A model generated the notes under the pieces. It was not told the origin of the DNA and ran no database searches. It saw only the letters and a program-made list of their open reading frames with translations. DNA of 62,723 nucleotides, counting the filler, from Polymyxa betae A26-41 (taxonomy: Eukaryota > Protista > Endomyxa: Phytomyxea): assembly GCA_003693705.1 (NCBI GenBank). It is 6 parts of 6 records of this genome, joined end to end, with 100 filler letters (N's around TTAATTAATTAA, not from the genome) between each part and the next. Parts side by side here need not be neighbours in the genome. Positions count along the whole stretch, not along the records: positions 47,990 to 55,668 come from RBZT01000422.1; 5 more parts are not named here. One strand, written 5' to 3'. Positions 47,990 to 50,269 of the stretch are shown here, piece by piece. Every line of letters begins with the position of its first letter. Positions within the stretch are counted from its first letter, which is position 1. A program made the translations under genes and the position numbers.

Positions 47990-48154
47990 CCAAACTCGAC
48001 TCCGTCTAGCAGGTTGAGAGTCCGGGAAGAATGGGTTCAATTCTGCGAACTGGGCGCACTCCGCAGACCACCCATTCTAAAGACGATTTCTATCGAAAGT
48101 TTGCAGAATTGTTATAAAAGAATGAAAAATATTGATGTATTAATGAAATGATCT

Positions 48155-50269
48155 CTACTCAGCGCGACCACAAACCTGTTTGTCTTCGCCTGTACCAGGA
48201 CACTTCTGCCGGCCAAAATTAGAATGCTCGCCCCATCGGCGCATGAACTCATCAATACTGCTGCCACAGTGATGTTGGAAACAGTTCATCACTGGTTCAA
48301 TAACAGAATACCAAGCACTGCGGAGTGCTGGTACCATATCATTGACACTGACTCCGGACGACTGACAGATTTTGTTCACCTTCCGAATCATCTCAATTTT
48401 TTCGCGAGTTGCCTTGATTCTGATCAGACCCTTGCGCTCGGGGACGTCGAACGATGCATTCAATCGTCGTCGCTTTGGCGGCGGCCTGGAGGGCACGGAG
48501 GCCGGTCGGGATATCACAACGTCATCATCGGAATCGCGATCGGGCTGCTCCGAGGGCGGGACCAGTACGGCCGGAATAATCGCGGCAGAATATTTTCTCG
48601 CCAGAACCCGCGTGATCTCATTCCTGACATCGGCGAGTCCGGCATCAGCGATCTTGGCGAACAGCTGCTGGAGATAAACATCCGGATCGCCCTAATCGTC
48701 GTAACGTATCAGGGCGTTGCCCAAAGCTATTACGTTACGGGTTTGGCGCGGATGCAGAACCCGCTGCGTGACCATCCTTTCAACGAACTTTCGGGCGACC
48801 AACAAGAAATCGTCGTGCTGTAACGCATTGATCGTTACAGCCATTGCCGGACCAGGATTGTCGATATGGAACGGTCGCCACTTGTTGTTGAATCGGAGCA
48901 GCATATCATGATGTGGGAATATCGCCGACCCGACACAGTGCGTCAGTGCTCGCACTTGTCACATAACACATTACATGCATGACGGCATGACACCAGTGCT
49001 GTTTTACACACAGCACACACGCAGAATGTCGCCTAGGGTAATAATATAACAATAATACAATCATTCTTCGTTTGATATAGAAGTTCGCTCCTACTGTGTA
49101 GAAGCGATCCAAGTCGTGCTAGCCACGACACATCATCACTAAATTTTTTTAAAAAATTTGTAAAAAATTCGGAGTTCGTTACTCTTGCCGATTTCCAGCA
49201 ACGTCAACGCGTCACTAAAATATTGCTTGGCCTAATTCAAGCTTTTATGACGCGCGGACATCATAATTTGGGCCAGGTCGCCCTCACCCCATAAAGCCAG
49301 GATATATCCTGTCTTACGCATGGTGTGGGTGCCCCACGGCCCCTTCCGCTGGACCACGGATTCGATAGCCTTGACAAACCTGATGAAAAACTATTATTGT
49401 TGAAAAAAATAAAAAATAACATAAATTTAACTTAATTTGTTTTAAATGTGGTATATTTGAATGGGTTACCTTTGGCATCCGTAAAAAGATATCCTGCAGT
49501 CTTGTCGGATAAGAAAATCCATCCTAAAAGATTCCGAACGAGGCATAACTCCGGAATATCATCGCTCCGATGGATGCTAAGATATTTTGAGGAATCATCG
49601 GACTTGCCCTTGATTCGAATTCCAACAGTCAATAAATCGCCGGAAGTATGGCTGACTGTGGTCAAGCAGGGTATAAAGTCCTCGAACATAAACTGGATTC
49701 CTTCCTTGGATCGTAACATTAAACAACGTGGAACAGGAACATGGTCCATAGGCGATATCCGGCCTTGAAATTCTTCGGTAATAGGGAAGTCCGTAACTGG
49801 ATCATTTCATGAAGCAGTAACCCGGATGTTCCCTGCGGTTGATAATCCGGAATATCAAACCGCGTGATGCGCTCAAAACGATTCTTGACTTTGTCGAGCT
49901 CGCGCGGAGATCCAGAACGCCATAACTGCCGATTCGGATGGAACACGCATCCGCCGGCCTGCCCGGACCGATAAGCGTCCCAACAACGAGGACAGGGCTC
50001 GTTATAAACTCCAGTCTGCTTTCGAGCCAAATGCAATCTCGAAATCGCGACCAAAAATTGATTACAATTGCCGGATCACGCCCAAGTTGCAGTTGATAAA
50101 ACTGGCTGTTTAGTGAATATATCAAGAACAGCTCCGACCCTTGATCGATTCGACGCATTCGTCAAAGTTAGATTGACAGGAGTACCCTCCGGAAGAACCT
50201 TATAATCGATAAACTCCAAGATAGAATCAGCGCTCATCGATGGACAGAACTCCACTGGCGCGCGTTCAC
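48155..50269 (-). pseudogene. Tyrosine recombinase of a Crypton-like element with long C-terminal extension; disrupted by stops, frameshifts and LTR insertions
   Basis: Catalytic set MLRSKE, KGKSD, LCLVR, GTHTMRKTG, ARHKS, KQYF; CPRC..CVFH motif; frame continues KWRPFHID...CFQHHC. Confidence 0.85.
48912..49132. mobile_element. Solo LTR inserted in the recombinase gene
   Basis: TGTG...CACA termini, AT-rich polyA-signal-like core, near-perfect flanking duplication tcatga/tcatca. Confidence 0.65.

What the first reader, a model, noticed from the sequence alone, without database searches (positions are those of the whole stretch)
48000..50269. Crypton-like tyrosine-recombinase DNA element with an unfamiliar domain architecture
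Seen: joining minus-strand fragments across stops, an intron-like gap and a solo LTR gives one long protein. It has an N-terminal region with CPRC-x11-CVFH, a full YR catalytic set (R in MLRSKE, K in KGKSD, HTMR, H in ARHKS, Y in KQYF), a helical linker, a KRRR NLS-like motif and a C-terminal CFQHHC..F..W..F..KC domain. No RT gene belongs to it. Known: RT-less eukaryotic YR transposons are Cryptons, and their described partner domains include GCR1_C and DUF3504; neither is recognisable here. Inference: a distinct, possibly undescribed YR transposon lineage. Mobility is supported by a second diverged copy at 29788-30878.
Basis: partly seen in the sequence, partly recalled or inferred. Interest (0 to 1): 0.85.

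Follow-up and report, generated by a model that had tools for sequence, protein, structure and literature searches.

The report
Dead copy of unnamed Crypton-like recombinase transposon
The minus strand at 48155-50270 holds a broken, front-truncated copy of a reverse-transcriptase-free tyrosine-recombinase transposon gene; its family is widespread in protists, carries a tail domain of unknown fold, and matches none of the four published Crypton groups I could compare it with.

Summary
Seven stop-free minus-strand pieces (48158-50258) each match, in the same order, a family of about 670-780-residue proteins (single-pair E 1e-58 to 4e-10). The full R-K-H-R-H-Y set is present in the window and conserved across the family. 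A full-length relative folds as a two-domain Cre-like recombinase (Z 17.8).

The CPRC..CVFH motif is a conserved Cys3-His insert inside the Cre-like N-terminal domain, not a separate domain. The roughly 100-residue C-terminal Cys/His helical domain folds confidently but matches nothing in Pfam, PDB or the ESM Atlas.

The window copy is dead. It lacks about 128 N-terminal codons, cut at about 50270 by a Ty3/gypsy-like retroelement. It also has four premature stops, a 1-base frameshift, and a 222-bp dispersed repeat at the intron 2 / exon 3 junction.

No RT belongs to it. Diverged extra fragments exist in the same organism.

Named relatives occur in Plasmodiophora, Saprolegnia and Chytridium; the rest are soil and water metagenome contigs. 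Catalytic motifs differ from the published CryptonS, F, I and A alignments, and there is no GCR1_C or DUF3504.

Termini and transposition were not shown, and later Repbase/Dfam groups could not be checked. Verdict: a real new variant of a known kind, of moderate interest.

The parts
50079..50258 (-). Piece A: start of the retained Cre-like N-terminal (core-binding) domain. It corresponds to residues 129-187 of relative P0006, so about 128 N-terminal codons are missing.
   Evidence: BLASTP E 1e-25, 58% identity; alignment.
50076..50078 (-). Premature stop 1 (TGA), between pieces A and B.
   Evidence: homologues have an ordinary residue here.
49722..50075 (-). Piece B: rest of the core-binding domain. 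It holds the conserved Cys3-His insert (CPRC 49983-49994, CVFH 49938-49949) and the RSGSPR motif.
   Evidence: BLASTP to P0006 194-306, E 8e-35. The C, C, C and H columns are kept in 26-30 of 29-30 family members.
49722..49724 (-). 1-base deletion (frameshift) just before LMLRSKEG.
   Evidence: One-base gap against L011 in alignment A3; frames; hits to piece C begin at query residue 28-29.
49435..49721 (-). Catalytic domain, first half (end of exon 1), with R at 49711-49713 and K at 49603-49605. A premature TAA lies at 49432-49434.
   Evidence: phmmer found 69 hits, best E 6e-32; coordinates checked.
49380..49431 (-). Intron 1. The acceptor CAG|G at 49380/49379 is firm. The ancestral donor is probably near 49431 and is disturbed in this copy. 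One public contig instead skips 49380-49469 (GT..AG on the minus strand), which is out of the ancestral frame.
   Evidence: Same intron position in L011 and L012; joint in run X4.
49183..49379 (-). Exon 2: catalytic domain, second half, with HTMR 49316-49327, H at 49247-49249 and Y at 49220-49222. A premature TAG lies at 49232-49234.
   Evidence: BLASTP to Plasmodiophora P0007, 73% identity, E 8e-19.
49131..49182 (-). Remnant of intron 2 (donor AAGA|GTAACG at 49182).
   Evidence: Donor at the same position in L011 and L012.
48909..49130 (.). 222-bp dispersed repeat with TG..CA ends, consistent with a solo LTR. It is inserted at the intron 2 / exon 3 junction and removes the ancestral acceptor.
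   Evidence: Absent from L011. Depth about 90 against about 15 nearby; up to 7 contigs; contigs continue into unrelated sequence at 48908, 49063 and 49130.
48158..48908 (-). Exon 3: helical linker, premature TAG at 48692-48694, acidic/proline linker, KRRR at 48464-48475, and the C-terminal Cys/His helical domain (about 48158-48460, CFQHHC at 48266-48283). The natural stop is at 48155-48157.
   Evidence: P0001 56% identity, E 1.3e-58; P0007 E 4e-10; AF2 model of 48158-48487 with pLDDT 82.8.
50270..54167 (+). Not part of the element. A decayed Ty3/gypsy-like LTR retroelement (gag-like ORF, protease, RT, RNase H, integrase zinc finger; 25-bp x4 tandem repeat at 50295-50395). Its left edge truncates the recombinase gene.
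   Evidence: Pfam RVT_1, RT_RNaseH and Integrase_H2C2; tandem repeat; contigs that continue into unrelated sequence at 50270 (X3) and 50283 (X2).

Best explanation
This is the wreck of a Crypton-type DNA transposon gene. A Crypton is a eukaryotic mobile element whose only enzyme is a tyrosine recombinase, with no reverse transcriptase.

The intact ancestor encoded a nuclear protein of about 700 residues with four parts:
1. A Cre-like core-binding domain carrying a conserved Cys3-His (probably zinc-binding) insert.
2. A Cre-like catalytic domain with R, K, H-x-x-R, H and Y.
3. A helical and disordered linker with a KRRR nuclear-localisation-like motif.
4. A C-terminal four-helix Cys/His domain of about 100 residues with no known relatives, presumably a DNA- or partner-binding module.

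By analogy with Cre and with Cryptons seen moving in Chlamydomonas, such an element would be cut out and re-inserted by site-specific recombination between short matching sequences. That step is inferred, not shown here.

The window copy cannot work. About 128 N-terminal codons were removed by a retroelement insertion. It has four premature stops and a 1-base frameshift, and a 222-bp repeat destroys an intron acceptor.

The family differs in its catalytic motifs and accessory domains from CryptonF, S, I and A.
For: - All seven pieces align, in the same order, with 670-780-residue homologues.
- Catalytic residues are kept across 42 family members: R 39/40, K 42/42, H 36/39, R 38/39, H 39/39, Y 37/39.
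- The AF2 model of relative P0015 (pLDDT 83) matches Cre. Foldseek gives E 2e-7 and TM by target 0.67-0.70. VIA gives Z 17.8, with 280-290 residues aligned at about 3.1 A, model 40-426 against Cre 19-337.
- Pfam on the family: NDC10_II in 9 of 42 (best E 1.4e-6) and Phage_integrase in 5 of 42. No GCR1_C and no DUF3504.
- No RT appears in any homologous locus.
- One subgroup sits beside a Peptidase_C48 gene, a partner reported for some Cryptons (PMC3212892).
- Relatives share two intron positions and have intact exons.
- Against L011, dN is 0.215 while dS is saturated.
- The same organism holds extra copies at 86-95% identity, and one metagenome holds two paralogues.
- The published CryptonS, F, I and A motifs differ.
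Against: - No element termini, target repeats, empty site or circular form were found.
- The 3' flank is cut by the piece edge and by another repeat at 48012.
- In two metagenome subgroups, every contig shows the same flanks. That fits a single locus, or a larger element, as well as a small transposon.
- The comparison with the published Crypton groups was by eye on printed alignments, not a phylogeny.
- Language-model look-alikes include unnamed oomycete and diatom clusters that could be CryptonS.
Confidence: 0.7

Rival explanations
1. It belongs to an already named Crypton group: CryptonS in a broad sense, or one of the later groups I recall being listed in Dfam/RepeatMasker. On this reading nothing here is new except this dead copy.
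For: - CryptonS is described as a recombinase plus a conserved C-terminal region that is not GCR1_C. It is about 3 kb, sometimes has a C48 peptidase gene, and is found in oomycetes including Saprolegnia (PMC3212892).
- This family has a Saprolegnia member and a subgroup with a C48 partner.
- The nearest ESM Atlas clusters are unnamed oomycete and diatom proteins.
Against: - The printed CryptonS alignment has FGRASD, RVKT, SHSFRRGGAQHAN, DRGAW and FAYVFNT. This family has LFLRxDE, KVKGKSD, THxxRKTGY, SARHKS and AxxYxxDA, with H rather than W at the fifth catalytic position.
- No Phytophthora protein appeared among the roughly 100 hits, although CryptonS is abundant in Phytophthora.
- The later Repbase/Dfam groups could not be tested at all.
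Confidence: 0.2
2. The recombinase is the integrase of a larger virus-like or cargo-carrying element (polinton-like virus or Starship-like element) rather than of a small Crypton.
For: - Contigs of about 9-10 kb, identical across at least 8 metagenomes, carry the recombinase with a 350-residue ORF and a C48 peptidase protein of about 850 residues.
- One look-alike Atlas cluster is labelled mostly viral.
- Polinton-like viruses use tyrosine recombinases (PMC12220804).
Against: - A scan of IMG/VR viral contigs found no relative.
- No capsid, polymerase or packaging gene was recognised.
- Many contigs are only 2.3-3.5 kb with the single ORF.
- The soil subgroup has spliceosomal introns.
Confidence: 0.06
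3. It is a decayed copy of a domesticated host gene derived from a recombinase, not a transposon.
For: - Some subgroups show one constant genomic context.
- Plasmodiophora P0037 sits between housekeeping genes and has lost the first catalytic His.
- Crypton domestication is well known (PMC3212892).
Against: - The catalytic set is kept almost throughout the family, unlike DUF3504 or Ndc10.
- Several diverged paralogues and fragments occur per genome.
- The window copy lies in a nest of transposon debris.
- The taxonomic distribution is patchy.
Confidence: 0.04
4. The recombinase belongs with the neighbouring reverse transcriptase as a DIRS-like retroelement.
For: RT and RNase H lie within 2.5 kb on the other strand.
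Against: - That element has a protease and an integrase H2C2 zinc finger, so it is Ty3/gypsy-type.
- It runs in the opposite direction.
- Its own edge at about 50270 is seen with different flanks elsewhere.
- No homologous locus has an RT.
Confidence: 0.01

Closest known systems
CryptonS (stramenopile Cryptons; Kojima and Jurka 2011, PMC3212892)
   Same: An RT-free element in protists with only a tyrosine recombinase. It has a conserved C-terminal region that is not GCR1_C, some members have a C48 peptidase gene, and its size is about 3 kb.
   Different: Catalytic motif signatures differ throughout, and the fifth catalytic residue is W in CryptonS but H here. No TATGG termini could be shown. 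No Phytophthora members were found.
CryptonF / Ndc10 domain 2 (Pfam NDC10_II, PF16787)
   Same: The best Pfam similarity of the recombinase domain is to NDC10_II (9 of 42 members, best E 1.4e-6). Some oomycete CryptonF elements also have a C48 partner.
   Different: There is no GCR1_C domain. The motif signature differs (LLRGExRR, GKTNQ, AGRW in CryptonF). Unlike Ndc10, the catalytic set is intact.
CryptonA / DUF3504 (including Glomhopper, PMC13465315)
   Same: The active site is H-type (..H..9 residues..Y), with an RKT-like stretch after HxxR. It is a single-gene element.
   Different: No DUF3504 hit in any of the 42 members. CryptonA has no C-terminal domain. This family has the Cys3-His insert and a tail of about 260 residues.
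Cre recombinase of phage P1
   Same: Two-domain fold (Z 17.8, about 285 residues aligned), the same order of catalytic residues, and the same 9-residue spacing from H/W to Y.
   Different: About 12-15% identity. This family adds an N-terminal extension, roughly 100 inserted residues including the Cys3-His motif, a nuclear-localisation-like motif and a new C-terminal domain. It is a eukaryotic gene with introns.
DIRS / Ngaro / PAT retroelements
   Same: They encode a tyrosine recombinase with an FLRxDE-type first motif.
   Different: They carry RT and RNase H in the same unit and have W at the fifth position. No RT belongs to this element.

Membership tests
Tyrosine recombinase superfamily | Catalytic R, K, H-x-x-R, H/W and Y in order, with typical spacing | tested here: met
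   All are present in the window and conserved in 36-42 of 39-42 family members.
Tyrosine recombinase superfamily | Core-binding plus catalytic two-domain fold | tested here: met
   Model of relative P0015 against Cre: Z 17.8, 280-290 residues aligned, rmsd about 3.1 A. This was shown for a relative with 37% identity to piece C, not for the broken window protein itself.
Crypton (broad sense: eukaryotic DNA transposon with a tyrosine recombinase and no RT) | No reverse transcriptase in the same unit | tested here: met
   The neighbouring RT belongs to a separate Ty3/gypsy-like element with its edge at about 50270. No homologous locus has an RT.
Crypton (broad sense) | Dispersed, multi-copy in the genome | tested here: inconclusive
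   Extra fragments at 86-95% identity, with different flanks, occur in contigs of the same organism. Two paralogues occur in one metagenome. Two other subgroups show only one context.
Crypton (broad sense) | Defined termini with short (4-6 bp) direct repeats matching the target | tested here: inconclusive
   The 5' end is lost to the retroelement. The 3' flank is cut by the piece edge and by a repeat at 48012. The 3' flank comparison was weak.
Crypton (broad sense) | Excision and integration by recombination (circular intermediate) | not testable with these tools
   This needs an experiment or population data on an intact copy.
CryptonS | Recombinase sequence clusters with CryptonS (signature FGRASD, RVKT, SHSFRRGG, RGAW, FAYVFNT) | tested here: not met
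   Compared by eye with the published alignment against the family consensus. No tree was built.
CryptonS | TATGG terminal direct repeats | tested here: inconclusive
   No termini could be identified. There is no TATGG or CCATA in 47990-48160 (read).
CryptonF | C-terminal GCR1_C DNA-binding domain | tested here: not met
   No PF12550 hit among 42 full-length or 41 C-terminal sequences, even at E 10.
CryptonA | Recombinase recognised as DUF3504 (PF12012); no C-terminal domain | tested here: not met
   No DUF3504 hit. A conserved C-terminal domain is present.
DIRS-like retroelements | RT/RNase H (and methyltransferase) in one unit with the recombinase | tested here: not met
Starship captains | DUF3435 recombinase | tested here: not met
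   No PF11917 hit. It appears only as a distant look-alike cluster at rank 28.

The most novel reading that the evidence does not exclude
The family is an undescribed, superfamily-level lineage of Crypton-like elements spread across distant eukaryotes: Rhizaria, oomycetes, chytrids and many uncultured soil and water protists. It would be defined by an H-type Cre-like recombinase with a Cys3-His zinc insert in the core-binding domain and a new C-terminal Cys/His four-helix domain. Some members would have grown into cargo-carrying elements of about 10 kb with a C48 peptidase.
Probability: 0.4. Interest if true: 0.6.

Novelty: new variant of a known kind. Interest (0 to 1): 0.45.

Why it matters
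Cryptons are the least understood class of eukaryotic DNA transposons. They are acknowledged to be several unrelated lineages held together only by their use of a tyrosine recombinase. A further lineage with intact catalytic residues, a confidently folding accessory domain of unknown fold, and intact members in soil and water protists would do three things:
- widen the catalogue used to annotate protist genomes, where these genes are currently 'hypothetical' and one sits in a bacterial MAG;
- offer a new eukaryote-adapted Cre-like recombinase with its own nuclear-localisation-like motif to test;
- give a candidate new DNA-binding module.

The window copy itself is only a fossil and has no function.

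Tried and rejected
Searches that found nothing useful:
- Pfam on each window piece: nothing.
- Word-indexed protein search with piece C: nothing, because of the tool's length window.
- Metagenome scan with the C-terminal alignment A1: nothing.
- ESM Atlas with piece G: no usable hit.
- Profile of the family against PDB sequences: only chance hits.
- IMG/VR viral contigs: no relative.
- Rfam on the piece: nothing.
- The bacterial promoter/terminator scan is not meaningful for a eukaryote.
- The search of earlier findings was not open.

Ideas tested and dropped:
- CryptonS was my working idea after I saw the Saprolegnia member, the C48 partner and the 'conserved C-terminal region'. I dropped it after reading the published CryptonS alignment.
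- The DIRS reading was rejected.
- I looked for element ends by comparing eight loci of P0098. All share one context, so they gave no ends.
- The 3' flanks of the window, L001, L022 and L023 share only two weak short blocks.

Each piece was used alone by reference, and a natural full-length relative was folded instead.
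Full report
**What is in the piece.** Only 47990-55668 is real sequence. The minus strand from 50258 down to 48158 carries seven stop-free pieces:
- A 50079-50258
- B 49722-50075
- C 49435-49806, of which only 49435-49721 is in the true frame
- D 49235-49390
- E 49142-49231
- F 48695-48958
- G 48158-48691

The plus strand from about 50270 to 54167 is a decayed Ty3/gypsy-like retroelement. 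It has a gag-like ORF, an aspartic protease signature, RVT_1, RT_RNaseH and an Integrase_H2C2 zinc finger, and it breaks off inside the integrase. A 25-bp x4 tandem repeat sits near its left end.

- G matches the metagenome protein P0001 (56% identity, E 1.3e-58).
- C gave 69 hits among 1.8 billion representatives (best E 6e-32).
- A and B match residues 129-187 and 194-306 of P0006 (E 1e-25 and 8e-35).
- D and F match residues 150-182 and 207-276 of a Plasmodiophora protein (E 8e-19 and 4e-10).

With each piece kept as its own row, the pieces tile a family of 670-780-residue proteins from about residue 129 to the C-terminus.

**Damage in this copy.**
- About 128 N-terminal codons are missing. 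Similarity stops at about 50267-50282. Public contigs that cover the retroelement continue into different sequence to the left of 50270 (X3) and 50283 (X2). The retroelement edge is therefore what truncates the gene.
- Premature stops lie at 50076-50078, 49432-49434, 49232-49234 and 48692-48694. In relatives these positions hold ordinary residues.
- A 1-base deletion lies near 49722-49724.
- A 222-bp segment (48909-49130) is absent from the close relative L011. In contigs of the same organism it is a multi-copy repeat: depth about 90 against about 15 nearby, up to 7 contigs, and contigs that continue into unrelated sequence at 48908, 49063 and 49130. It sits on the intron 2 / exon 3 junction.
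- Runs X2 and X3 carry 9 extra bases after 48226. These restore three residues that P0001 also has.

**Gene structure.** There are two short introns, not one. L011 is a soil metagenome contig about 75% identical in coding DNA. L012 is a contig from a public sequencing run. Both interrupt the gene at the same two places. Two further soil/rhizosphere contigs, L022 and L023, have the same layout with clean exons and an intact C-terminal domain, so working copies probably exist in related organisms. Against L011, dN is 0.215 while dS is saturated. The lineage therefore evolved as a protein-coding gene under constraint.

One contig of run X4 skips 49380-49469, with GT..AG ends on the minus strand, and contigs of X3 and X4 start exactly at that site. 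This may be splicing of a transcribed dead copy through an upstream donor, but only 23 letters lie on the short side of the joint and the run type is unknown.

**What the protein is.**
- *Catalytic residues.* Across 42 family members they are nearly invariant: R 39/40, the following E/D 39/40, K 42/42, H 36/39, R 38/39, H 39/39, Y 37/39.
- *Fold.* AlphaFold2 on the natural full-length relative P0015, using that alignment, gave mean pLDDT 83. Residues 40-426 superpose on Cre over both of its domains. Foldseek gives E 2e-7 and TM by target 0.67-0.70. VIA gives Z 17-17.8 with 280-290 residues aligned at about 3.1 A. XerH, lambda Int, the Tn1549 integrase and Flp follow.
It lies inside this Cre-like region, so it is an insert in the core-binding domain and probably binds zinc.
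- *Linker.* After residue 426 come a helical stretch, a disordered acidic/proline linker and the basic KRRR-type motif.
- *C-terminal domain.* It is about 100 residues long. I folded the window's own version (48158-48487) with 40 homologous tails. It gave pLDDT 82.8 and four helices followed by a Cys-rich tail. The best match among 48,161 PDB representatives was Z 4.1, and the best ESM Atlas match was TM 0.40. Pfam gave nothing, even at E 10. It remains unexplained.

**Which kind of element.**
- *No RT.* No homologous locus carries a reverse transcriptase, and the RT beside the window copy belongs to the separate Ty3/gypsy-like element.
- *Pfam.* On the family it finds NDC10_II in 9 of 42 members (best E 1.4e-6) and Phage_integrase in 5 of 42 (best E 3.8e-5). 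It finds no GCR1_C, DUF3504 or DUF3435.
- *C48 partner.* One subgroup (P0058) lies in contigs of about 9-10 kb that recur in at least 8 metagenomes. These also carry a 350-residue ORF and a C48 (Ulp1) peptidase gene that appears split by an intron. Kojima and Jurka (PMC3212892) report a C48 partner for some oomycete Cryptons.
- *Named relatives.* Saprolegnia parasitica XP_012211442; two Plasmodiophora brassicae proteins, labelled 'Tyr recombinase domain-containing'; and Chytridium lagenaria KAI8854957. The rest are soil and water metagenome or run contigs of 2.3-10 kb, a few labelled 'integrase'.

**Comparison with named groups.** I first favoured CryptonS, which is described as a recombinase plus a conserved non-GCR1_C C-terminal region, about 3 kb long, sometimes with C48, and present in Saprolegnia. 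That paper's Additional file 4 prints recombinase alignments:

| Group | Printed motifs |
|---|---|
| CryptonS | FGRASD ... RVKT ... SHSFRRGGAQHAN ... DRGAW ... FAYVFNT |
| CryptonF | LLRGExRR ... GKTNQ ... THAxR ... AGRW ... CYL |
| CryptonI | GHSFRR ... HGGW |
| CryptonA | RRGRE ... TKN ... NHxxRAT ... SGH ... Y |
| This family | LFLRxDE ... KVKGKSD ... THxxRKTGY ... SARHKS ... AxxYxxDA |

This family has H, not W, at the fifth catalytic position. It therefore differs from S, F and I. It shares the H-type site with CryptonA but is not recognised as DUF3504 and, unlike CryptonA, has a long tail.

This is a comparison by eye, not a tree. From memory, Dfam/RepeatMasker list further Crypton groups, and I could not test those. 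Language-model look-alikes of P0015 are unnamed oomycete and diatom clusters, followed by NDC10_II, GCR1_C, DUF3504 and DUF3435 clusters. That places it among eukaryotic recombinase elements without naming a group.

**Mobility.** This is only indirectly supported.
- In favour: contigs of the same organism hold diverged extra fragments. Examples are 48424-48726 at about 87% identity, and 49984-50138 at about 95% with unrelated sequence on both sides. One metagenome holds two paralogues, L011 and L013.
- Against: two water-metagenome subgroups always show the same flanks.
- No termini, target repeats or empty sites were found.
- The mechanism (excision and site-specific re-insertion) is inferred from the Cre-like fold and from CryptonF elements seen moving in Chlamydomonas (PMC9977147).

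**Verdict.** The element is a dead, truncated copy of a Crypton-type recombinase gene. Its family has a real, conserved and so far unnamed architecture. Whether the lineage is truly undescribed depends on a comparison with Repbase/Dfam that I could not run.

Noticed in passing
window 50270-54167 (+): A decayed Ty3/gypsy-like LTR retroelement. It has a gag-like ORF (50441-51433), protease, RT, RNase H and an integrase zinc finger, with several stops, and it is cut off inside the integrase near 54110-54167. No matching 3' LTR lies in the piece. A 25-bp x4 tandem repeat at 50295-50395 lies in its 5' region.
   Followed up: partly
window 47990-48023: The left end of the piece is a high-copy repeat (depth about 50 against about 15). 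Contigs of X3, and apparently X2, match the window only from 48012 rightward. X3 shows different sequence to the left of 48012 (ending ...TTTATGGT), so this flank seems to differ between strains.
   Followed up: no
window 48226: Runs X2 and X3 have 9 extra bases (CCCGAAAGT on the plus strand) after 48226. They restore three residues of the C-terminal domain that P0001 also has, so the window has a 3-codon deletion.
   Followed up: partly
window 49380-49469: One X4 contig joins 49379 to 49470, skipping 90 bases with GT..AG ends on the minus strand, and X3 and X4 contigs start at 49468-49470. This may be splicing of a transcribed pseudogene through an upstream donor, and it is out of the ancestral frame. 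Support is weak: 23 letters on the short side and an unknown run type.
   Followed up: partly
L003-L010 (metagenome contigs, about 9-10.4 kb): The same block recurs almost unchanged in at least 8 metagenomes: the recombinase (P0058, 736 residues), a 350-residue ORF of unknown family, and a 730-residue ORF followed by a 109-residue Peptidase_C48 ORF (likely one gene with an intron). It could be a larger Crypton with cargo.
   Followed up: partly
L015 (GCA_049240585.1, contig JBMLSI010000005.1): A family member (P0098, 706 residues) is filed in a bacterial MAG labelled Fimbriimonas sp. The same locus occurs in many water metagenomes, so the contig is probably eukaryotic sequence binned by mistake.
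   Followed up: no
L024 7719-9494 (Plasmodiophora brassicae CDSF01000087.1): The Plasmodiophora member P0037 sits between housekeeping genes. It lacks the N-terminal domain and has N in place of the first catalytic His (GTNVMRK). It may be a decayed or domesticated copy.
   Followed up: partly
window 54780-55082 and 55380-55650: An inverted repeat with 32-nt arms (91% complementary, 239 nt apart) looks like a miniature element. A GA-rich block of 18-22-bp tandem repeats with G+C 0.64 lies at the right end of the piece.
   Followed up: no
window 48055-48150 (-) and L001 592-700: The 3' untranslated flanks of the window copy and of L001 (56% protein identity) share two short similar blocks (CATTT..TTAxTA and GAATGGGTxGT..CGGxG). 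The similarity is too weak to call a conserved terminus.
   Followed up: partly
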